Source: Botryllus schlosseri | Lineage: Eukaryota | Assembly (NCBI GenBank): GCA_051294905.1 | Contig: CM119378.1 | Coordinates: 20,460,001-20,524,000, forward strand | Direction of reading: 5' to 3' | Length of the DNA: 64,000 nucleotides | Part shown: piece by piece, positions 14,048-51,054 of the stretch | How positions within the stretch are numbered: position 1 is the stretch's first letter | Layout of the letters: each line of letters starts with the position of its first letter | The notes under the pieces: model-generated | Seen by the model: only the letters and a program-made list of their open reading frames with translations | The model's database searches: none | What the model was told of the DNA's origin: nothing | Position numbers and translations under genes: made by a program

Positions 14048-15489
14048 CCCAGGATTATATAGCGAGCAGAAAAGTCGTGTGTGATTTAACACGATAATCG
14101 CGGATTTGTGCAAGGAAAATACGTCGAAGCGCCGATGAAAGATACCGCCGTTCCGAAGAACAGAGATTTTTTGAGTATTGAAATTATTTTTTCGATGCTA
14201 TTTTCCACTGTAAACCTCGATTAGCCGTTTCGACTCCCGCCGCATACGAAACCTATATGGTACAAAGCTATATAGGCATATCTATATATCTATATAAAGA
14301 TTTTACTGACCATACCTATTTCACTGTAGTGTGTAACAACGCTGTGGGTTGATCAGAACAGAACGTCAAAATTGGCAGATATATTCACCAGTGACTTCTG
14401 ACGCAACGCGACCAGAACGCATCGCTAACGCACGCCACGTTCGCAAATCTATTATCGTTACAAAAGTTCGACACCCGAGTCATTTAGTAGCGAAAGATGA
14501 GCGGTTAGGTCGACTAAGTAAATCTCCTTAAGAGTCGCCCCCATGAAATATTCATTCGCGACGCTATTGAATTTCGCACAAAGTTTAACCGCGCCGCGCA
14601 GGTAAGTTTCGGTGATTCACCACCTACAAAAAAGGTGACGATACTAACACGCCATTGGAAGCAGAAACCCAGTACTATCCCAGGTAAATTGGTGTACTGT
14701 CGGAAGAGGCTGCCACCATTCATCAATCATAAGTTGTATGCCGGTACTAATTATTCTGAACGAGCCAAATTAACGGTTATATTTATGCAGCTGGTGTTTC
14801 ACATTGCCGGTGATGCCTCTTTTGAAATTGCTCACGATTTACGCACCAAGACTTGGTGGGCTTTACGGCTCTAAAAGGATGAAATCTAGTTGAAAACTAC
14901 AGGTTACGACCGACGCAATTAAGTCACCCGAAAAGGCTTTATTGTCAGTGGCTAATAATGAAGTCGTGTCCCGAGAACTGCAGATACAATCACACAGCAG
15001 AGGTCGTGGGTGCTTGCATATTTCATAATATACACCGTACTGAAATATCGATTAGACAAGACAGGCAGATATGCGCGCCGGGATAAATAAGAACCCGCTG
15101 GGGAAACTTATACGCTATCTAAGCCCCGACGCCAATAATGTTGGGGTATGGTATAGTAATTTCTTGTTTGTATTCGGGTCTGTTCATTGATCAGGTTATG
15201 ACTGCTGGAACATGTTTCGATAGTTATAGGTACGCTATTTGCGTCAATACAGCATTTCATAACGTATGGTAATAGCTAATAGCAGAATAAATCAGTGTTC
15301 CCCACAGCTTCGAGAAGATGTTTTGATCCCCATCCATACCATGTTCCGACCATATTCCGCGTAAATAATGATCGTAACAGGTGGACTGATCGTGATCAAT
15401 GATCATGCATAAACTGTAGCACTATACACGGATGGCCCGGTGAGCATTTTGGCTACGACATAACGCATAGGCACCAATACAAATGGTCA

Positions 15490-15542
15490 AATGGTCGATT
15501 CCGATTCCGATTCAAATACTCGAATCATTTTGCTCAGCCCTA
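15490..15542. mobile_element. hAT-like terminal fragment (reverse complement TAGGGCTGAGCAAAATGATTCGAGTATTTGAATCG)
   Basis: TAGGGCTG terminus with subterminal GATTCG repeats, typical of hAT MITE ends. Confidence 0.45.
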
Positions 15543-15581
15543 GTTGCAAACAACACATTGCAGTAATGAAAATTTACTCAC

Positions 15582-15651
15582 CAGGTTCAGCCATGACCGG
15601 AATCACAACGAGTACAAAAATGTAATAGTTTAGCATCGTCAACAGTGGCAT
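15582..15651 (-). CDS. tutl: Putative alternative signal-peptide coding segment (for an Ig1-less isoform)
   Basis: ATG at 15651 with in-frame upstream stop. MPLLTMLNYYIFVLVVIPVMAEP has a hydrophobic core and small-residue cleavage region, and ends at a consensus donor CTG|gtgagt in phase 1, which matches the Ig2 acceptor at 9565. A possible acceptor (cacttacag|) lies at 15765/15764. Confidence 0.55.
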
Positions 15652-17546
15652 TGCAGTATCCAGCTTGAATATTTACAAATATGTATCACAACGCAACGGC
15701 CTTGCCTGGTCTTTACCGCATTGCGTTCTGTGACAACAGCTAACTAATATTCGAAAATCTATTGCTGTAAGTGTGAAGCAGAACCTTCAACGGAACAGAA
15801 CATCCACGTTAGCGCGTGTTGAAATTGCTGTCGTCCTGAGGTAATTAAACATTATTACTACTACCAGCATAATCAGGATTAGGTTTATTATGTAATAGAG
15901 CTACTCAGATACAGCGAATATGATTTGCAGAACCGGTTTACTATACCTTCCTACGAGATAATTTTAATATGAGGATGGCGGCAACAGTATGCTAACGAAA
16001 GACATGTAGATGATGTAGTACATTATGAAAAAACAAAATCAAATTGACACATTAATTAACTCTCTACGCTACACTCAGATTAGTCGTAATACCAGATTAT
16101 CAGCGCATCAGCCTATTTCAACTATCAATAAAAAGATATTTTGGTTGAAGGCAAATGATATGTTTTTTCGAAGCGCTGAAAGGATTATACTGAAAACTAA
16201 AGTTACCTCAAGACTCTTAGTGGAATACCATTTCTAATGCCATCTACTCTATTGTAGGAGTAAGTTGACTCCTGATTGCTACAGCTTTTAAAAAGAAGTT
16301 GTCGAAAAGCTCAATAATTCCGGAGAAGCTGTCCATCGAAATGCCTCATTGCACAGCGATATTTTTCTGCATCGCGTGGTGGGATATGATTTTCATTCCG
16401 CATGAAATAAAAGTAACTTTATTGCCATATGCCTCATATACCTGTATAGGTACGGCTATCTACGGTCAAATGGTATATATATAATCTGAAACTAATGTTA
16501 CACACCTCACCCTGCCATTTCTAGATATTAGTACACTACCAAACCGCACCGCAACCAGCACTATATGAAGATGAATTCGCCTAAACCGAGAGTTGTGAGT
16601 CCATCCCGACCAGATGGCACGCAAAAACTATTTGCAAAAAATTAAGAACATCTGCCGTGTAAGATATCCCCAAATTGATGAATCAAATCCGTCGAAGTCT
16701 AGAAAATCATTCCCGCGCGTATAACCCACGGTTTTAATAACTCAATCCAAGTGTTTCCCTAAGTCAAAATATCTAAAATACGCGTCTGATCGATAAATCC
16801 AATCGGGAAGGGGAGGACTCCTGTGGGATACAGGATTAACAAGTGTATACTACCGCTGAACACAATAGCATCTATAAGTAAATATTGAGTTAGCTCACAA
16901 AATCGAAATTTTCGAAATTCATACGCGGCACCAAATCGATTACAGAGGATATATCAAAAATTAATATTAAATTCAACTTAACACTCGAGCTTCCAAGATT
17001 AAGCCGGGACTATAGTCGAAGTTTGAGTTATGGTATTTTAATGAGACCGTATTGGGACTTGACGAAAAATCTCGAACTAGCTTGCATTTCGTTGCGAAAT
17101 TTCACCAGAATTGGCGGAACATTTAATTTGATATGTTTTAATTCGAGTCCCGGATTCTGGTATTAGAATTGCAGAGCTGCAATGCACAGAACTTCAATAT
17201 ACAATTGAATAGTATATTCATATTGAAATGAACCCGAATATTTTCAGCTGACACTCGTCAGGGGTAGTCGTCAGCAACTATAGTAGAGAATTGGAAGAAA
17301 CATTGTATATGAACAATCGTATCCCCAAATACGACGTCACCGGCATGACATTTCGAATAATCGGTGCGAAAAGATCGCTAAGCTCAATGTACTGTTTTTA
17401 GATGATACACGAGCTTCTTTCTTAGGCACAAACTAGGTTGGCTCATTAGAATTAACGAAAAAGACCAGCCCTAGACCTGCTTCATAAAATACTAATTGCT
17501 TCAAGTGCGTTTCGTGATTTCAGCAGGGCCCAGCCGGTTATAAATT

Positions 17547-17708
17547 GCAAGTCCAACAACAGTCACGATACCTACATAAGCTCGCAAGTCCAACAACAGT
17601 CACGATACCTACATAAGCTCGCTTGCCTTGCGTAACTTAGACCAAACTGAAACGTCTTAAATTTTTCTGCGTAACTTAGACCAAACTGAAACGTCTTAAA
17701 TTTTTCTG
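17547..17708. repeat. Two adjacent perfect tandem duplications (37 bp x2 and 39 bp x2)
   Basis: gcaagtccaacaacagtcacgatacctacataagctc at 17547 and 17584; tgcgtaacttagaccaaactgaaacgtcttaaatttttc at 17629 and 17668. Confidence 0.95.
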
Positions 17709-17799
17709 AGTGTAGAAAGACAATGTCGCGCGCCCGGGCGCACGCCGTCTACGAAACTAGTTTCAAATGCCATCGAACACATTGGGGTGGGACAATGGA

Positions 17800-18150
17800 C
17801 AACTGTAAAATTTTCAGCTTTTCAAAAATAAATTAGAATAAGAATTATGACTATACAGCCTTTTTCCAAATTAGAATAGTATTAGAATTACAGCTATACA
17901 GTTTTTTCCAAATTAGATTAGAATTAGAATAATAGCTACACAGTTCTTTTCAACTTAGATTATAATTAGAATTACGGAATTCGCGAAAACTATGAGATTG
18001 AATCAAGCTCAGTTCGTAACAAACCGGAATTCATTCTCATAATGCAAGAGATTGGAAATGTATGCACAGCAAACAGCAAGCTTGGTTCGTTTCGCACTAT
18101 AGAGTTCTCCTGTAGCATTTTGATTAGAATTAGAATTAGACCGGCATTTC
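17800..18150 (-). repeat. Dispersed repeat with TTCTAA-rich end (family also at 23685-24100 and 51055-51430)
   Basis: Reverse complement shares 'gaaatgccgg...aatgcta(c/t)aggagaact.t.tagtg.gaaa' with 23728-23880; similar segment at 51055-51300. Confidence 0.6.
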
Positions 18151-21100
18151 GTTTTGTCCCGTTGTAATATAATGTAACCGCAAGATTATGTACAACGCCC
18201 CCTGGAAACCGGTTCTTTCTCCGTACGCGCGAGTTAACATGACATTATTACCACTTGGTATTTAAACATTTCTTGTGATTTCCGACTGTGGATGAGATAC
18301 TTATTGAAATTCAGGTTGCGACGTAGAACTTGTAACTTATAACATTTATGTGCCACTTTTAACGCATTCTGTATACCGTATTTGAAGAGTAAGGTAAGGT
18401 ATCTAAAAATGGACTTAACGATCGAACTTCCTGATATATTACCATTACTATACAACGTGTCCATCCGCTTATTACGGTATTGCTTGCCGCTACAGTAAAG
18501 GCGAGTACCTAGTAGAAACGGCAATAAACCTCACTCATGACCTCGTCCATACTAATTAGCAACGACGGCACGCGAGCAAACGTATACCAACAGCGAATTA
18601 TGCAAACATTTTCGAGATTGGGTCACTTACTACATCAAGCTTCCTCGTAGTATTTCAGGTCAGTAGTTTTCTATTCAATTCAAATCTGAAACATCGATTC
18701 CAGTCGAGCGTAAGAAAATATCCCATCTGACAACGTAATAGGCTACTCAATGTCGTACTCGGAGGAATCAATAATGATCCACTGCAGAACTTATGAAATT
18801 CAAACTTGAAAATGGTGCGAAGTGCGAGAAAATTCGCATGAAACTGTCATCCACAGACTAAATATCCTCAACCACTGCTGGCTTGGTAATCACTCTGCCT
18901 GGGCCCTAGACTACCCAGTCAATATAGGAGAGGTTGATTCGGAACAGACAAATATAAACACCATACCGTACCTCATCACATGAAGCCTTGAGTAGGCCTC
19001 AGCCATACCTGCGAAACAGCGTCATTAGACACAACAAGTCCCCCAGCTGAACTCCCTACCACATTGATACGTTGACTTGCAACCATGCCTCATTCGGCAA
19101 CTATTTAGTATTTACTATACACATCATGTGAAGCAAGCCACGCTCATTGTAAACCTCACTGCAAAAATCTGACGCTATCGACACTAACTGCGTAATGTTT
19201 ATCGCTTCTTGCAACATTCAGGCGTTGTGCTCGCAAGAACCTTGTGCTACTATGCATGTTAAACAAGCAAAGCCTGGCCTTCAGACAGAGAACGCTCAAG
19301 CTTCTAGTAAAGAACAGAGTACAGACGTAGTATTTAGTTTCGTCGTGAAACCAGTATAGTGTAGCATGATCAACTATTGATATGCGTAGGCTACTTGATT
19401 GCAACAGTATAAACTCTGACACCTTGGCTTTCATTTCAGCGCTCAATATTTGGGATTCCGAAGCTCACTCACAGAAATACGGTATTTATTTACATCTTAA
19501 ACCTGTCAACAAAACTAATGCTGTTCTGACAAAACGCAGATTGTGACGTAGTAGTCGTACCTATTTCATGACCTCGATTGACGTTGACAGTTGAAACGCT
19601 AGGTTTTGGGGCTAGCGTTTGGCACATACATTCGGCTTTGAGCGATTTCTGAGCACTGCAAACCTTGCAAAAGGCGCAAAATGTAACAAGCACACGCTAA
19701 TACAAAATAACATTTTCCACGCGCACCCACGCAAGCGCGCAATCAGTTTAATCCACTTATCGCGAGACAAAATTGCCAATAGGGTCGGATCTGGAATTAA
19801 TTTACACACGTGCTTGAGTATTCGATTGTTTCTGCCAAAGACAACAGATTAGGGATTGGTCAGGTCAGATAATAGGAAAAACTAATAAACTTCTTAAGAC
19901 GTTAATTCAATATCGTAACAACCCCGCAAAATTTCGCGTGAACGCTGTAAGCTGTAAGACTGTGGCTGTATGCTCCTGTACATTGTGCAGTGGACACTGT
20001 ACGTACAGTGTACGACGTACGTACACTGTGTCACTCTCGTATATTAACTAGTAACTACTGATCATCAAGGCTCAAATCTTCAGTAAATTCAACGGAACTG
20101 AGTTGGTAAGGTTGCTCGGAATCTTACAAGTCCTGTTTAACTGAATGCAGTAACACAGATCGATCTGGGCCTGTTTTGCTATACTATTATTAAAAACGAA
20201 TTAGCCTACCCCTGTTAAGTTCTGATTGGCATTAAACATTCACACGCTCAGCCTGAAACGACCAGCCATAAAAGGTGATCACACAGAACCCACAGGGCGA
20301 CATCCTAACTCACTGCAGGGGTTCATGATCCATTTCCGTTCGTAATTTCATCCGTTTCAGCTGACGCTGTCAGGTGTACAGCACGGGTCGCGATTACCAT
20401 CGCCAATTCTTCGTGGAAATGATACCCGGAGATTCACACGGTCAAAGGAGTAAGCCGGCAATTATAACGGGAATAGCGGAGTTTTATATGATGGGGCGTG
20501 CCGGCCGTCATCATTAAGTCCGACATCAAAGGGAGATAAAGTGGGTATCGCCCAGGGATGAGAATATTTATATATACAATATACTTCGGATGTATGCAAT
20601 GACAGCGGCGCACGGCATTTAGACCGCGACTTGAATTAATTTAACACTGTATCTATCTATAGATGACAGTTTGTTAGTTTGTGGTACTTCATCAAATTCG
20701 AAACCTGAACTGCGCATCTTACTAGACCGGTTGTTGGGATGGAATATTGTCGATCTAATGAATACATGTAGTGAGTAGTGTAATACATATTACCAGACAT
20801 TGACTGAGGCTTTTCCAGATATACTGTCTTAGCTGAATTGGCGATAGCGGCAGATCAAAACGCCAAAATATCCATATCACAAGACGCGTCACTCGCGTAT
20901 ACGCCGCCATACACCACATTGGGAAACATAAAAAAAGCATACATAAATCCATCTCATCAAGTCTGCACTGTCATATTTTCCTTACAGTGTACTGTACAAG
21001 TTTTAACAGGTAAAATTGTTACGCCTTATCGAGACTCCGTCACACAAATAAAGATATGCAACGCTTTAAGCACGGTTCGCCATGCTTTGCTCACTAAATT

Positions 21101-35824: not shown

Positions 35825-35998
35825 CGTTTACAACCAACTGGACCCAGGTTCCATTCACGTACGGGGCGCTCTGTTGCCCAGCGCCGGTTTGTCTTGTAAC
35901 GCCCAGAAGATAGACTTTACAGTTGTACCAACCGTCGTCTTGCGCCATCACCAGATGGATGGAGAGGTCCGAAGTGCCTGTCCTCAACGCCATTCGAC
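35825..35998 (-). CDS. tutl: Turtle/IGSF9 exon: second half of Ig1
   Basis: cag|GT acceptor, AACG|gtgaat donor; 174 nt, phase 1-1. GRMALRTGTSDLSIHLVMAQDDGWYNCKVYLLGVTRQTGAGQQSAPYVNGTWVQLVVN, with Turtle-like NGTW motif. Confidence 0.93.
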
Positions 35999-37997: not shown

Positions 37998-38166
37998 CTT
38001 TGAAAGATTCGTCGATATTTGGAGAATATGGCCCGATCTTGATGAAAACCGGCGATCCCTTGTCTTTGCGAAGCCACACGACTACTTTGGTTGGATCCGG
38101 GCGGTGATGACCCTCTCCGCATGGCAATACAGCTCTGTCTCCTTCATTGACTGTTACCACATGAGC
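37998..38166 (-). CDS. tutl: Turtle/IGSF9 exon: first half of Ig1
   Basis: Acceptor ccag|GCT (phase 0; alternative tag|AT at 38174 is phase 1), donor AAAG|gtgatt. AHVVTVNEGDRAVLPCGEGHHRPDPTKVVVWLRKDKGSPVFIKIGPYSPNIDESFK. Confidence 0.92.
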
Positions 38167-41100
38167 CTGGCCATCTAAATTGAGAAAAAAATATTTAAAA
38201 AACCCAATATTTTAATTTCATTTGCGTCAGATTATAAATGACGTTCAATCGATGATGTTTCGAAAGTAGTCATTTATTCACCTTATCTCGTATAATGAGA
38301 CTGCTTAATTGTCCTAACTTGCACTTAACAAATTTCCGTGATTCTTATTGGAAAGTTTGAGTAACGACCGTTCAACGAAACAGCCTATATGTTACGTACT
38401 ACGCATTTATTTAAGCCGCAGCGACGTGAAGTATTATATGAATAAGATCTCCGGTAGGGGACACTGCCGAGTCGCACCAAGCTGAGTGAAAACAGCGCGC
38501 GAAATATGAATTCCAAGTTATCGTACATGGGCATGAGCTGAGCTCTGAACAGCCACTGCAATCAAAAGCTTGAGCTGCATCCAGAAGTGGTATATATTAA
38601 ATGACAGAATATCACAACTGACCGACCAATGCGAATACAGGCAATGTTAACATGTTTCGTACGATCTTTATCTACACGTTTTTGAGACACTTATGATCAA
38701 TAGTGCTTGATTTTCAACTGTCTACGTCTAGCCGCATCGCGGCGGAAGTAGAAAGCGCAGTTTTCAACACACGCGGATAAAATCAAAAATATACTGCTTC
38801 TCCAGTATAATTTGCTTAAAATATCACTCACTGGCTCGTTTCAGATGTAACTGCAAATATTTGAAGTACCTATAGATCTAGTCTGGCAAAATCATCCTCC
38901 AGCAGTCGAACCATGCCGGTTACGAATTAGAGCATCTTATTGGTCGCAAACTAGGCCCATACCTACTAGAAGTTTAGCAACAAGCTGTTATAAACTACGA
39001 TAATGATTCGCACCTTTCGTGCAGACCCGGATTCTACGATTTAAGAATATTTTAGTTCCGTAATGCAACTTGTGCAGTCGCGTGCCACTTCCACTGCGAA
39101 CAGTGCTGTTCTATCTCTGTGCTCGATTCGTCACACCATTGTCGAAAGTCGACCCGTGATTGGGAGCACGACTTGGAATCGGATAGAGCAGCGAATTCCA
39201 CATATATATTGCAAGTAATCGCAAATTGATAATGGCTTTCCGATGTAATTACGGAGAGCAATATCCTTTTCAATTAACCTGCCAATCAAGCGATGGACAG
39301 ATAAACGCAATAGCCTCTACTTTCTTTCCCTCATATAGAATGAAAGAAGAAACTATATACTGCGATATTGCCCGAATAGGGTCTGATCGAAATCCGTTAA
39401 CATACGTTTTACCAACGAATGCAGTCCAGAATTTACAACAATTGTAACGAACGCATTTTGCGCCAACATCTTGACAGCATCACAAGTTCTATTGTCATTA
39501 CACGACGTCGTTTACGCAAGCTTGCTATTATTTTTGTGTATCGTCACTGTAACAACATACAGGGTTAAGTCCCCCAAGCCGCACGTTTTGATATGATTTT
39601 ATTTGTTTCCATTTTAGAAAGGAGAGTACCTTAAAATACGGCCTGTTGGAATGTACCTAAGCCTTTTCCCATATACGTCCGTACCGGCCAACCGGATACA
39701 TATTTCCATTTTATATCTCAATTGCAAAATTCAAGTACATGAAGGTTTGTTCAGTAATTAGTGACTTGAAATATCATATTCTAAGATGATGATAGAAATT
39801 TAGAAAGTATAAACAGAGTTCATGGCATGTTTTGGAGTTACCGTACGTCACAATGCTTAAAGTGTTACTCCACACTGTTTAAAAGTAGCCTATGCTAAGA
39901 CCAGTATCACGTGAAACCGAGAAGAAGACTTCTAAGACAAAATATAACGAAATTCCATAGTGCAATTTGACGGTCTTCCAGTAAACGGCAGCCATAGTTT
40001 TTGGTTATTACAGGACATCGCCTTGTACACTTCAATGGAACCATGTACATAAAACACATGTATTATCATAAAGGCAGTAGCAAGTTTCTCATTTTGTTAA
40101 TAACTATGCAGGTATCGTTGTGCCAGTGATGTTGTTGTAGGTTTCGAAATCATAACGCAAGCTAAAAGGGTCGAGAACCACCGCTTACAGACAATCGACA
40201 AAGGTCTAGGAAGGTATGAACCCTACAACAAAATATGCGTCAACGAGCGATTCAATTCTTCCAATACATCTTTACCTGTACGACACTCGAGTATCGAATA
40301 GGGAATCAAAGTCGGCGAAAGTCCGGCATGCTCAAGAATCGATACGACAGTAGCAAATGACTCATCGACGGTGATACCTTAATCCGAAATAGTAGATGGG
40401 GAAACGCGCCGGAGTGGGTCCGAAATCCTGCGCTTCTGCTTTTAGGGCGGAATCTGGAGCGTAAAATCAGCAGTGGACAAAGCCGAACGCCACTCGACTA
40501 CTTTGGTGATTATTGCGTGGAGATCCGGAGACCCATTATATGAGTGGAGATCAAAAGAAGGTTCTTCTTCGTTTTTATGAAGTCATAAAATCCATAGATC
40601 AAAACCCCTCATTGTAGAAAGCTATCGTTTACGTAACTACTGGACAGTGTCCATAATTCGCGAGCAAGACAATGTGTCGCGATATGGTTGATCAATGGAC
40701 TCGCGATATCCGAGTAACTGTAAAAATGGCTTACACTTTAACGTACCCATAATCAACATGAATTACGGTTGCTCAAATGGCTGGCAACGATAAATAGATT
40801 TAATATGTGCTAAATTGCCGGACAAGCGATAGAGAACAGGGAGTCATTGAAATGAATATGGGCATCGCCAGTGACGACCATTCGTGGTTAACGATTATTA
40901 TTATTATCTGACTATTACCCAACAGTTTCTTCAGTGTTACTGGCTTTCAACCACTTATATTCCTTAAAGGGGCACTCCGCTCTAAATACGACGTGGTCTC
41001 AAATTAAAGATAGGGAAAAATATTTTGGCCTCAGCCAATTTCTTCAGAAATCCACCGTTGAGGAACTGCAGCTAATCGAGAATTACAACTACCCCCATTC

Positions 41101-49342: not shown

Positions 49343-50598
49343 ATTATATCACTGTCGTTTAAATTTGAGGTCCTTTCTGATTTGACATATACATTCAGGC
49401 TAGACCAGCACCCAAAATTATATCATCACTGGGTCAATTTTTTCAGGCTATTGATATTGTTGAAGTCGCCAACACTGAGTTTTGCTACAGTGCCTTGGAT
49501 GGATCGATTCGAGTATCTCATACCCCTATAAGTTCACGGATCTTGCCCATAAATGCAACTTATTAGTGCAACTTTTGTAAAAAATAAGTGCAACTTTCCA
49601 CAAATTTGACTGCAACAAAAACTTGCCCTTTTGATGACTGTTAGCCGAATATATTCGTGTTCATTTCTTTACAAAGATACTATTCAAGTAAAGCGATAGT
49701 TCGATATGGATTATGTTAAAACACGTAACACGCAATAGGCATGTGCAATTTCCCAAAGACGCCGGACGCAAAGCCTTTCGCAAAGCTTCTGGGATAAAGT
49801 AATTGAGCGACTATGTACACACCACATCTTATGCTATATAGTCCTTTGGAAGTTAGTAGTATACCAACTTTGGGAGCTTTCAGAGTGCAGTAGCAGTATA
49901 GGCATCCCGGAATGCCGATAATACATAGGAGTCGATCCCAATATCCAAGCATAAATAAAATACACCCATCTCAATACGACATCAGATGTATCGGAAACCA
50001 CCAAAATGGCATAAAAACTTACTTGTGGCAACTGGAATCCACAGAAGTACGGCTGCAATCCAAACAAAGTAAAACGCATTGGTGGTAACTGTCTTGCAGC
50101 TTTCCATCGTCCGACATCGATAACGCACCCGCTTCGACCGTTTATCAAAAACCGCTACGTTACTCTACAGTATCAAAGTTCATGGTATTTTTGATAACAT
50201 ATTATTCCAATGTCTGTGAATGATTAGAAAAATTATTAGAATCGGGCGATTACGGCATCAAATCCGTAATATTACACTGCGCAGTGTAAAGTTAGCGGGC
50301 AATGTGTATTGCGTTGAGCAGGAAGAATCAATCATTAGGACAATATATAGCCTAGACACCAGCACCTGAGTATGGACTCGCTTATATATATGCGAGTGTG
50401 TATATGTCAAAAATTGTCAACTGCTGGAGCCCAAGTCAGATACCACAGTATCGACGCAATTATCACGGACACGCACATACATCAACATATGTCCGAATCG
50501 GACTCACATAAAGACACTCATCAGAATATTGACAATTATTGTTGTTTAGAATTCTACAATACCGTCCATCGTAAAATACAATGTCGCATGGAGCATAC

Positions 50599-50721
50599 CA
50601 ATTCTTGCCGGTAGCAGGCACGCACTTGATGGACTATAAATAGAAATACAGCGGCCGTGTAATATGTTACCAAAGATATATTTGATTCTCGCGGCAAACC
50701 GCGGTGATGGTAACGTCGCAT
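50599..50721 (-). CDS. tutl: Turtle/IGSF9 first coding segment: signal peptide (exon probably 50599-50781 including 60 nt 5' UTR)
   Basis: aaaatATG at 50721. MRRYHHRGLPRESNISLVTYYTAAVFLFIVHQVRACYRQEL has a basic n-region, hydrophobic h-region and VRA|C cleavage-like site. Donor TTG|gtatgc, phase 0, fits the 38166 acceptor. Strong upstream acceptor ttctcttatttcggcttcccgtcgtcacattttcttcag| at 50782/50781. Confidence 0.65.
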
Positions 50722-51054
50722 ATTTTGAGCGATACCCGGCACAGTCGAATGGATTAATTGGGAAATATCTAGCACAGACGGCTGAAGAAAATGTGACGAC
50801 GGGAAGCCGAAATAAGAGAACTTTGAGTCAATGCCACTTGACACTAACTTCACCTCTACCGATCTCTTCGGGTACGAAGATATTGGCGACACAACCTACC
50901 ACCAAGACATGACTGAATACACTCAACAATATCCATCGATATTAGAGTGAAGATAGCGTGTTGGTGAAGTAGGAATCGGTATTAAATAATTGGAACGTAT
51001 TCGAACGCATATCACTACGAATCACTCAGCGACATATTATAACATAACAGAATT

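What the first reader, a model, noticed from the sequence alone, without database searches (positions are those of the whole stretch)
15582..15764. 'Stop-restart' exon in the Ig1-Ig2 intron: second signal peptide that could split the receptor in two
Seen: inside the 26.3-kb intron is a 183-nt unit with an acceptor (cacttacag|, 15764) and a consensus phase-1 donor (CTG|gtgagt, 15582). Read in frame from Ig1 it adds AIDFRILVSCCHRTQCGKDQARPLRCDTYL (4 Cys) and stops at TAA (15673-15675). Twenty-one nt later an in-frame ATG (15651) starts MPLLTMLNYYIFVLVVIPVMAEP, a signal-peptide-like leader that splices in frame onto Ig2 (V-PPMF). A minimal out-of-frame uORF (ATG CGG TAA) is at 15713-15721. Established: Drosophila turtle makes both membrane and diffusible isoforms, and N-terminal Ig domains usually mediate adhesion. 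Inference: either (a) an internal promoter makes an Ig1-less receptor with different binding, or (b) cassette inclusion gives a bicistronic mRNA encoding secreted Ig1 plus a re-initiated Ig2-5/FN3 receptor. The main signal-peptide exon (50599-50781) is also 183 nt, which may be coincidence.
Basis: partly seen in the sequence, partly recalled or inferred. Interest (0 to 1): 0.8.

Follow-up and report, generated by a model that had tools for sequence, protein, structure and literature searches.

The report
Second signal-peptide exon, Ig1-less receptor
Inside the big intron of a sea-squirt turtle/IgSF9-type adhesion-receptor gene sits a small alternative start exon with its own signal peptide; it most likely makes a receptor lacking the first Ig domain, as already annotated in other sea squirts, so it is a real but fairly ordinary feature.

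Summary
The acceptor (15764), the in-frame TAA, the ATG at 15651, the 23-residue hydrophobic leader and the phase-1 GTGAGT donor (15582) are all there. The leader splices open-frame onto the Ig2 exon (9565).

The genome is a stolidobranch ascidian, not an insect. The gene is the ortholog of Styela clava LOC120330818, in a tunicate clade sister to vertebrate IgSF9/IgSF9B.

Decisive evidence is comparative. Five annotated tunicate genes each have an isoform whose own signal-peptide leader joins exactly at the Ig1|Ig2 boundary. They are two in Styela (one the direct ortholog), two in Ciona and one in Clavelina. In all five the leader exon maps inside the Ig1-Ig2 intron.

A scan for such exons expects 0.02-0.05 per intron by chance. 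It found two in the window, both on the gene strand in phase 1.

So reading (a), an Ig1-less isoform from an internal start, is supported. Its 5' end may be made by spliced-leader trans-splicing at the "acceptor".

Reading (b), a bicistronic stop-restart mRNA, has no support. It would need re-initiation after a 175-codon ORF.

RNA evidence here is inconclusive: zero reads in three runs with no control exon, and one colinear contig.

The parts
15582..15651 (-). Coding part of the alternative leader exon: ATG (15651-15649), 23 codons MPLLTMLNYYIFVLVVIPVMAEP plus 1 nt (phase 1)
   Evidence: Peak 9-residue hydropathy is 3.42, with V-M-A at -3/-1.
15576..15581 (-). Consensus 5' splice site GTGAGT after CTG
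   Evidence: found by the donor-anchored scan
15652..15764 (-). 113-nt 5' untranslated part of the exon, if the AG at 15766-15765 is used. It contains the in-frame TAA (15675-15673) and the mini uORF ATG CGG TAA (15721-15713).
15765..15800 (-). Candidate 3' splice site (cacttacag|) with a moderate pyrimidine tract (about 65% Y). Proposed as an SL trans-splice acceptor, or a cis acceptor for an upstream non-coding exon. Its use is not shown.
   Evidence: One X1 contig runs through it unspliced.
15648..15858 (-). Stretch held as one colinear 211-nt contig in run X1 (kind guessed RNA). It is the only near-perfect unique contig seen in the 6 kb laid.
   Evidence: table 8; word shares 0.33 and 0.56
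15884..15890 (-). TAATAAA, a TATA-like heptamer 26-32 nt upstream of the contig's 5' end (15858). A post hoc and weak promoter hint.
   Evidence: sequence; contig end
9423..9565 (-). Ig2 first exon (phase-1 acceptor ttttcag|TCCCACCC), the splice target of both the Ig1b exon and the leader exon
35825..35998 (-). Ig1 second exon (RMALRTG...WVQLVVN, phase-1 donor G|gtgaat)
37998..38174 (-). Ig1 first exon (phase-1 acceptor tttag|AT; ...VTVNEGDRAVLPC...ESFK)
50023..50107 (-). Likely true signal-peptide exon of the Ig1-containing isoform (MESCKTVTTNAFYFVWIAAVLLWIPVAT, A|gtaagt, phase 1)
   Evidence: same phase and donor as exon 1 of the Styela ortholog

Best explanation
The 183-nt unit is an alternative 5' exon of an ascidian turtle/IgSF9-family receptor gene. 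Transcription starts inside the 26.3-kb Ig1-Ig2 intron. The exon supplies a short 5' UTR, its own ATG and a cleavable signal peptide. Its phase-1 donor joins the Ig2 exon, so the product is a full-length receptor (Ig2-Ig5, FN3 repeats and whatever lies downstream) without the N-terminal V-type Ig1 domain.

The stretch that reads in frame from Ig1 up to the TAA is simply untranslated leader.

Shown here: the sequence features, the open spliced frame, and the same isoform architecture in five annotated tunicate relatives.

Inferred: that the exon is expressed in this species, and how its 5' end is made. My split is about 40% SL trans-splicing at the 15764 acceptor of a short outron, 35% a plain capped first exon starting upstream of 15858, and 15% cis-splicing from an unseen non-coding exon. 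It is also inferred that loss of Ig1 changes binding.
For: (1) Anatomy is confirmed. The spliced leader-Ig2...FN3-1 frame is open for 496 codons, with canonical AG/GT at every junction.

(2) Rarity: only two such hydrophobic ATG-to-GTRAGT phase-1 units occur in the window. Both are on the gene strand, and the other is the likely main signal-peptide exon. Simulations expect 0.05 per 64-kb strand. The same scan on 224 kb of tunicate loci gives two unexplained hits over six strand-phases.

(3) Orthology: the window protein is 49% identical over 630 residues to Styela clava LOC120330818 and groups with it at 100/98 support. All tunicate genes form one clade sister to vertebrate turtle homolog A+B.

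(4) Five annotated genes each have an isoform with an unrelated 18-45-residue hydrophobic leader joined exactly at the first residue of Ig2. They are that ortholog (isoform X3, MAQWINLFYLLFLINNFVSTLAAKS-SPPVL), Styela LOC120331031 X3, Ciona LOC100182555 X3, Ciona LOC100184924 X3 and Clavelina LOC143462683 X2.

(5) In all five loci the leader exon maps inside the Ig1-Ig2 intron. The introns are 17.1, 45.5, 4.2, 4.7 and 8.4 kb, and the exon lies 0.3-22 kb upstream of Ig2. A phase-1 GTAAGT donor was read for both Styela genes.

(6) Both tunicate paralog groups carry the leader exon. Parsimony therefore puts its origin before their duplication.

(7) Run X1 holds one contig over 15648-15858, while the unique intron sequence around it has zero depth.

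(8) About half of Ciona genes are SL trans-spliced, and only at acceptors without an upstream donor partner (PMC1488885). Outron length peaks near 100 bp (PMC4691747). Earlier notes on this genome report the ascidian SL.
Against: No read or contig joins 15582 to 9565. Three 2026 bulk RNA runs, each sampled at 6-13%, show zero depth on the exon. I could not lay a constitutive exon as a control, so this says little.

The single X1 contig is colinear with the genome across the proposed acceptor, so use of that acceptor is unproven. X1 is only guessed to be RNA, and the contig depth is 2.5.

There is no detectable sequence similarity between this leader or its flanks and the Styela ortholog's leader region or intron. 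Conservation is positional only.

The isoforms in other species are database predictions. I found no paper describing them.

SignalP was not available; the signal peptide rests on hydropathy and the -3/-1 rule.

The protein search for spliced fragments found nothing.
Confidence: 0.78

Rival explanations
1. Chance unit. An intronic ATG, a hydrophobic run and a GTGAGT happen to line up in phase 1, but the unit is not used as an exon in this species. The ancestral leader exon may have been lost here or may lie elsewhere in the intron.
For: No junction reads. No sequence similarity to the Styela leader exon.
Against: Expected number is only 0.02-0.05 per intron. It lies on the right strand, in the right phase and in the right intron, as in five annotated relatives. 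It has the strongest hydrophobic core of all leaders compared. No other candidate was found in the intron.
Confidence: 0.13
2. Poison cassette. In transcripts from the distal promoter the acceptor at 15764 pairs with the Ig1b donor. The exon is included, the TAA ends the frame after 175 codons, and the mRNA is degraded by NMD or yields a secreted Ig1 fragment. No functional restart occurs. This could exist alongside the main explanation as a minor side product.
For: The acceptor and donor are both present, and the frame from Ig1 stops at 15675-15673. In trans-splicing animals an acceptor that has an upstream donor is cis-spliced (PMC1488885).
Against: No 35825>15764 junction was seen (not informative). 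The pyrimidine tract is weaker than at the gene's other acceptors. No annotated relative shows the leader exon as an internal exon. This reading alone does not explain the ATG, signal peptide and phase-1 fit.
Confidence: 0.06
3. Bicistronic stop-restart. One mRNA encodes secreted Ig1. After the TAA, ribosomes re-initiate 21 nt later to make the Ig2-FN3 receptor.
For: The geometry exists on paper. A loosely similar case in a stolidobranch is Botryllus fuhc: neighbouring secreted and membrane genes, with rare transcripts that link them (PMC3691228).
Against: Re-initiation after a 175-codon ORF is inefficient by established knowledge of eukaryotic translation. Relatives achieve the Ig1-less product from separate transcripts that start at the leader. 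There is no read support.
Confidence: 0.03

Closest known systems
Annotated Ig1-less isoforms of tunicate turtle/IgSF9-family genes: Styela clava LOC120330818 X3 and LOC120331031 X3, Ciona intestinalis LOC100182555 X3 and LOC100184924 X3, Clavelina lepadiformis LOC143462683 X2
   Same: Same gene family; the first is the direct ortholog. The leader exon lies inside the Ig1-Ig2 intron. The hydrophobic leader is 18-45 residues long. The junction falls at the first residue of Ig2, and a phase-1 GTRAGT donor was read in both Styela genes.
   Different: The leader sequences are unrelated at the sequence level. Those isoforms are pipeline predictions in other species. Here no annotation or junction read is available.
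Alternative promoters with SL trans-splicing in ascidians (Ciona: PMC1488885, PMC4691747)
   Same: An AG acceptor about 110 nt upstream of the start codon with no donor partner in an internally initiated transcript. The possible 94-nt outron (15858-15765) is near the modal Ciona outron length.
   Different: No SL-bearing read was obtained here, and the only contig crosses the acceptor unspliced. SL use at this site is an inference.
Drosophila turtle isoforms (PMC2739522)
   Same: Same family. One gene gives several products with different properties (five isoforms, two diffusible).
   Different: The fly isoforms described there are distinguished as diffusible or membrane-bound. An N-terminal Ig1-less form with a second signal peptide did not appear in the passages I read.
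Botryllus schlosseri fuhc secreted/membrane gene pair (PMC3691228)
   Same: A stolidobranch locus first read as one gene making a secreted N-terminal product and a membrane product. Rare transcripts link both parts.
   Different: There the locus is two adjacent genes 227 bp apart with no SL detected. Here it is one gene with an internal start exon 20 kb into an intron.

Membership tests
Turtle/IgSF9 family receptor gene | Ectodomain of five Ig domains followed by two FN3 domains, colinear with family members | tested here: met
   tblastn of family proteins maps Ig1-Ig5, FN3-1 and part of FN3-2 in order on the minus strand. The assembled 618-residue frame is open and 49% identical to Styela LOC120330818. 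The transmembrane and cytoplasmic parts lie outside the window.
Turtle/IgSF9 family receptor gene | Phylogenetic placement inside the family | tested here: met
   Tree: the window gene groups with Styela LOC120330818 (100/98), inside a tunicate clade (100/100) sister to vertebrate turtle homolog A+B.
Alternative first coding exon (own start and signal peptide) | ATG-initiated ORF open to a donor whose phase fits the downstream exon | tested here: met
   23 codons plus 1 nt, GTGAGT donor, phase-1 acceptor of Ig2, and 496 codons open.
Alternative first coding exon (own start and signal peptide) | N-terminal signal peptide | tested here: inconclusive
   The hydrophobic core IFVLVVIPV has mean hydropathy 3.42, with V-M-A at -3/-1. 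There is no basic n-region, as also in the Ciona and Clavelina leaders. SignalP was not available.
Alternative first coding exon (own start and signal peptide) | Transcripts that join the exon to Ig2 and lack the Ig1 exons | tested here: inconclusive
   zero depth in three subsampled RNA runs, no control exon, and one colinear contig in X1. A 6-kb limit kept both junction sides from being laid together.
Alternative first coding exon (own start and signal peptide) | Conservation of the feature in relatives | tested here: met
   Same intron and same junction residue in five annotated tunicate genes, with phase 1 read in both Styela genes. Primary sequence is not conserved.
Alternative first coding exon (own start and signal peptide) | Transcription start site upstream of the exon | not testable with these tools
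   No CAGE or TSS-seq data were available. The only hints are the contig 5' end at 15858 and a TATA-like heptamer at 15890-15884.
SL trans-spliced 5' end | Reads carrying the spliced leader joined at the acceptor (15764) | tested here: inconclusive
   No reads on the exon, and the X1 contig is unspliced at the acceptor. That the genome uses SL trans-splicing comes from earlier notes (unchecked) and from ascidian literature (PMC1488885).
Bicistronic stop-restart mRNA | Short upstream ORF permissive for re-initiation, and an Ig1-to-exon junction | tested here: not met
   The upstream ORF would be 175 codons. No 35825>15764 junction was seen, although the data are thin.

The most novel reading that the evidence does not exclude
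The Ig1-less form is an ancient, tunicate-wide second product of IgSF9/turtle genes that predates the split of the two tunicate paralog groups. One acceptor serves two fates according to promoter choice. Transcripts from the internal promoter leave it unpaired, so it receives the spliced leader and yields the Ig1-less receptor. Transcripts from the distal promoter pair it with the Ig1 donor, making the same exon a stop-bearing cassette. Promoter choice would thus set both the receptor's N-terminal binding domain and, through cis versus trans splicing, the yield of the full-length form.
Probability: 0.2. Interest if true: 0.55.

Novelty: new member of a known kind. Interest (0 to 1): 0.35.

Why it matters
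N-terminal Ig domains often carry binding specificity in Ig-superfamily adhesion receptors. A regulated Ig1-less form would give ascidian neurons two receptors with different partners from one gene.

The same exon architecture is annotated in both tunicate paralog groups and in three genera. That points to a conserved function that, as far as my searches went, has not been described in a paper.

It is testable in Ciona by reporter electroporation and isoform-specific knock-out. For genome annotation, it is a reminder that in trans-splicing animals an intronic unit of acceptor, ATG and signal peptide is usually an alternative 5' exon, not a cassette.

Tried and rejected
(1) Junction test by reads. 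The two sides (9565 and 15582) are 6,018 bases apart, beyond the 6,000-letter limit. I therefore laid 14500-20499 instead. There was no depth on the exon in X10, X12 or X14, and the loose-end table was filled by a repeat at 17186-17280.

(2) Protein search with leader plus Ig2a (71 residues), looking for spliced fragments. No candidate was found.

(3) Word-based search with Styela X3 residues 1-220. It returned only unrelated Ig-superfamily proteins.

(4) Exon duplication idea, that the two leaders in the window share ...IPV.... DNA and protein alignments score no better than shuffles, so I rejected it.

(5) Conserved non-coding or coding islands between this intron and the two Styela introns by blastn and tblastx. 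None were found.

(6) Rfam on the whole window (0 hits) and tRNA scan of 14500-20500 (none).

(7) Self-BLAST of 15200-16200. The region is unique in the window, so the exon is not part of a repeat.

(8) P0124, a vertebrate fragment that looked Ig1-less. I rejected it as translated polypyrimidine intron.

(9) Short members of the P0103 cluster, checked as possible spliced fragments. They are unrelated peptides.

(10) Scoring of acceptors upstream of the orthologous leaders. The script stopped after three loci and the result was not discriminating.

Full report
**What is there**

On the minus strand the unit reads exactly as described.
- The acceptor cacttacag| puts the first exon base at 15764.
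- Read in phase 1 from Ig1, 30 codons end at TAA (15675-15673).
- A three-codon uORF, ATG CGG TAA, lies at 15721-15713.
- ATG at 15651 opens MPLLTMLNYYIFVLVVIPVMAEP.
- CTG|gtgagt follows, with the last exon base at 15582, in phase 1.

I rebuilt the gene model from tblastn hits and splice sites.
- The leader joined to Ig2a (9565-9423) and seven further exons gives 496 open codons through FN3-1. Every junction is AG/GT.
- The Ig1-containing form uses 50107-50023, 38174-37998 and 35998-35825, then the same exons. It gives 618 open codons.
- In cassette mode the frame from Ig1 stops after 175 codons.

**Is it more than chance?**

I scanned for ATG-started ORFs of 16-45 codons with a strongly hydrophobic 9-mer that end at a GTRAGT donor.
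- The scan finds two loci in the whole window, over both strands and all phases. Both are on the gene strand in phase 1: this unit, and 50023.
- Markov simulations expect 0.05 per 64-kb strand.
- On 224 kb of tunicate loci the scan returned four hits. One was an annotated leader exon, one apparently a hydrophobic stretch within the Clavelina gene (not followed up), and two were unexplained hits on the opposite strand.
- The region is unique in the window.

**What organism and gene**

The best relatives are tunicate proteins.
- Earlier notes on this genome call it a stolidobranch ascidian that carries the ascidian spliced leader (unchecked notes).
- The window protein is 49% identical over 630 residues to Styela clava LOC120330818 and pairs with it at 100/98 support.
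- All tunicate genes form one clade, sister to vertebrate turtle homolog A plus B.
PMC2739522 does confirm five fly isoforms, two of them diffusible.

**The decisive comparison**

Five annotated tunicate genes have an isoform that starts with a short hydrophobic leader unrelated to the main one. In each, that leader is joined exactly at the first residue of Ig2.

| Gene and isoform | Ig1-Ig2 intron | Locus |
|---|---|---|
| Styela LOC120330818 X3 (direct ortholog; MAQWINLFYLLFLINNFVSTLAAKS-SPPVL) | 17.1 kb | L002 |
| Styela LOC120331031 X3 | 45.5 kb | L001 |
| Ciona LOC100182555 X3 | 4.2 kb | L003 |
| Ciona LOC100184924 X3 | 4.7 kb | L005 |
| Clavelina LOC143462683 X2 | 8.4 kb | L004 |

- I fetched all five loci and mapped the exons. 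In every one the leader exon lies inside the Ig1-Ig2 intron.
- For both Styela genes I read a phase-1 GTAAGT donor.
- The window has the same layout: a 26.3-kb intron with the leader 6.0 kb upstream of Ig2.
- Both tunicate paralog groups have the leader exon, so parsimony places its origin before their duplication.
- None of about 45 vertebrate family representatives sampled starts this way. That sample holds only cluster representatives.
- Leader sequences and intron sequences are not alignable between species, so the conservation is of position, phase and kind.

**RNA evidence**

It is thin.
- Three 2026 bulk RNA runs, sampled at 6-13%, give zero depth on the exon and on the unique intron around it. 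I could not lay a constitutive exon as a control, so this does not count against expression.
- An older run, X1 (kind guessed RNA), holds one 211-nt contig at 15648-15858 with two mismatches. It is the only near-perfect unique contig seen in the 6 kb laid.
- That contig runs through the proposed acceptor unspliced. It fits an un-trans-spliced primary transcript or a plain first exon starting near 15858, but also stray pre-mRNA or DNA.
- A TATA-like TAATAAA sits 26-32 nt upstream of 15858. The stretch 15858-15765 would be a 94-nt outron, and Ciona outrons peak near 100 bp (PMC4691747). Both points are post hoc.

**Mechanism**

The most likely reading is an internal start that produces an Ig1-less receptor with its own signal peptide.
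- In ascidians about half of all genes are SL trans-spliced, and only at acceptors that lack an upstream donor partner (PMC1488885).
- An acceptor about 110 nt upstream of an ATG is therefore what a trans-spliced alternative 5' exon looks like.
- Trans-splicing there would also remove two of the three upstream ATGs present in the unspliced leader.
- The same rule predicts that in transcripts from the distal promoter the acceptor could be cis-spliced to Ig1b, giving a stop-bearing cassette. That may occur as a minor by-product. Nothing supports productive re-initiation after a 175-codon ORF.

**Side result**

It fits Ig1a only through a second AG eight bases downstream of the first.
- The exon 50107-50023 ends A|gtaagt in phase 1 and fits the first AG. 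It matches the phase and donor of exon 1 of the Styela ortholog.

**Verdict**

The conservation across tunicate paralogs is mildly interesting and easily testable.

Noticed in passing
A second unit, ATG 50107 to A|gtaagt at 50023 (MESCKTVTTNAFYFVWIAAVLLWIPVAT), is in phase 1. It fits the first AG of the Ig1a exon and matches exon 1 of the Styela ortholog in phase and donor. The 50599-50781 unit may be a further alternative or non-coding 5' exon.
   Followed up: partly
window 17186-17280: A roughly 95-nt interspersed repeat is covered by hundreds of reads and more than a thousand contigs with many different flanks in all four runs. Summed word depth is about 46,000 in X1. It has no tRNA and no Rfam match.
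   Followed up: partly
L001/L002 (Styela clava OZ123517.1, 11.71-11.86 Mb); L003/L005 (Ciona AP043569.1, 3.95-3.99 Mb): In both Styela and Ciona the two turtle/IgSF9 paralogs lie next to each other in the same orientation. This looks like a tandem pair retained across ascidian orders.
   Followed up: no
Clavelina lepadiformis proteins P0316 (154 aa) and P0203 (1503 aa): The submitter's annotation splits one Clavelina locus into two models. One is an Ig1-only model that reads into the intron, and the other is a separate Ig1-less model starting at the alternative leader. This hints that leader-to-Ig2 transcripts dominate its RNA evidence.
   Followed up: no
Styela LOC120330818 and LOC120331031; Ciona LOC100182555 (proteins P0306/P0304, P0152/P0153, P0310/P0309): Isoforms X1 and X2 differ by a 16-17-residue insert inside Ig1, between ...F[GEK] and the following [GD]R... 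motif. This suggests a conserved alternative micro-exon within Ig1. I did not look for it in the window between 37998 and 35998.
   Followed up: no
window 18523-18750: An X1 contig matches here with 8 mismatches and 2 gaps, probably a diverged copy of a repeat located elsewhere in the genome.
   Followed up: no
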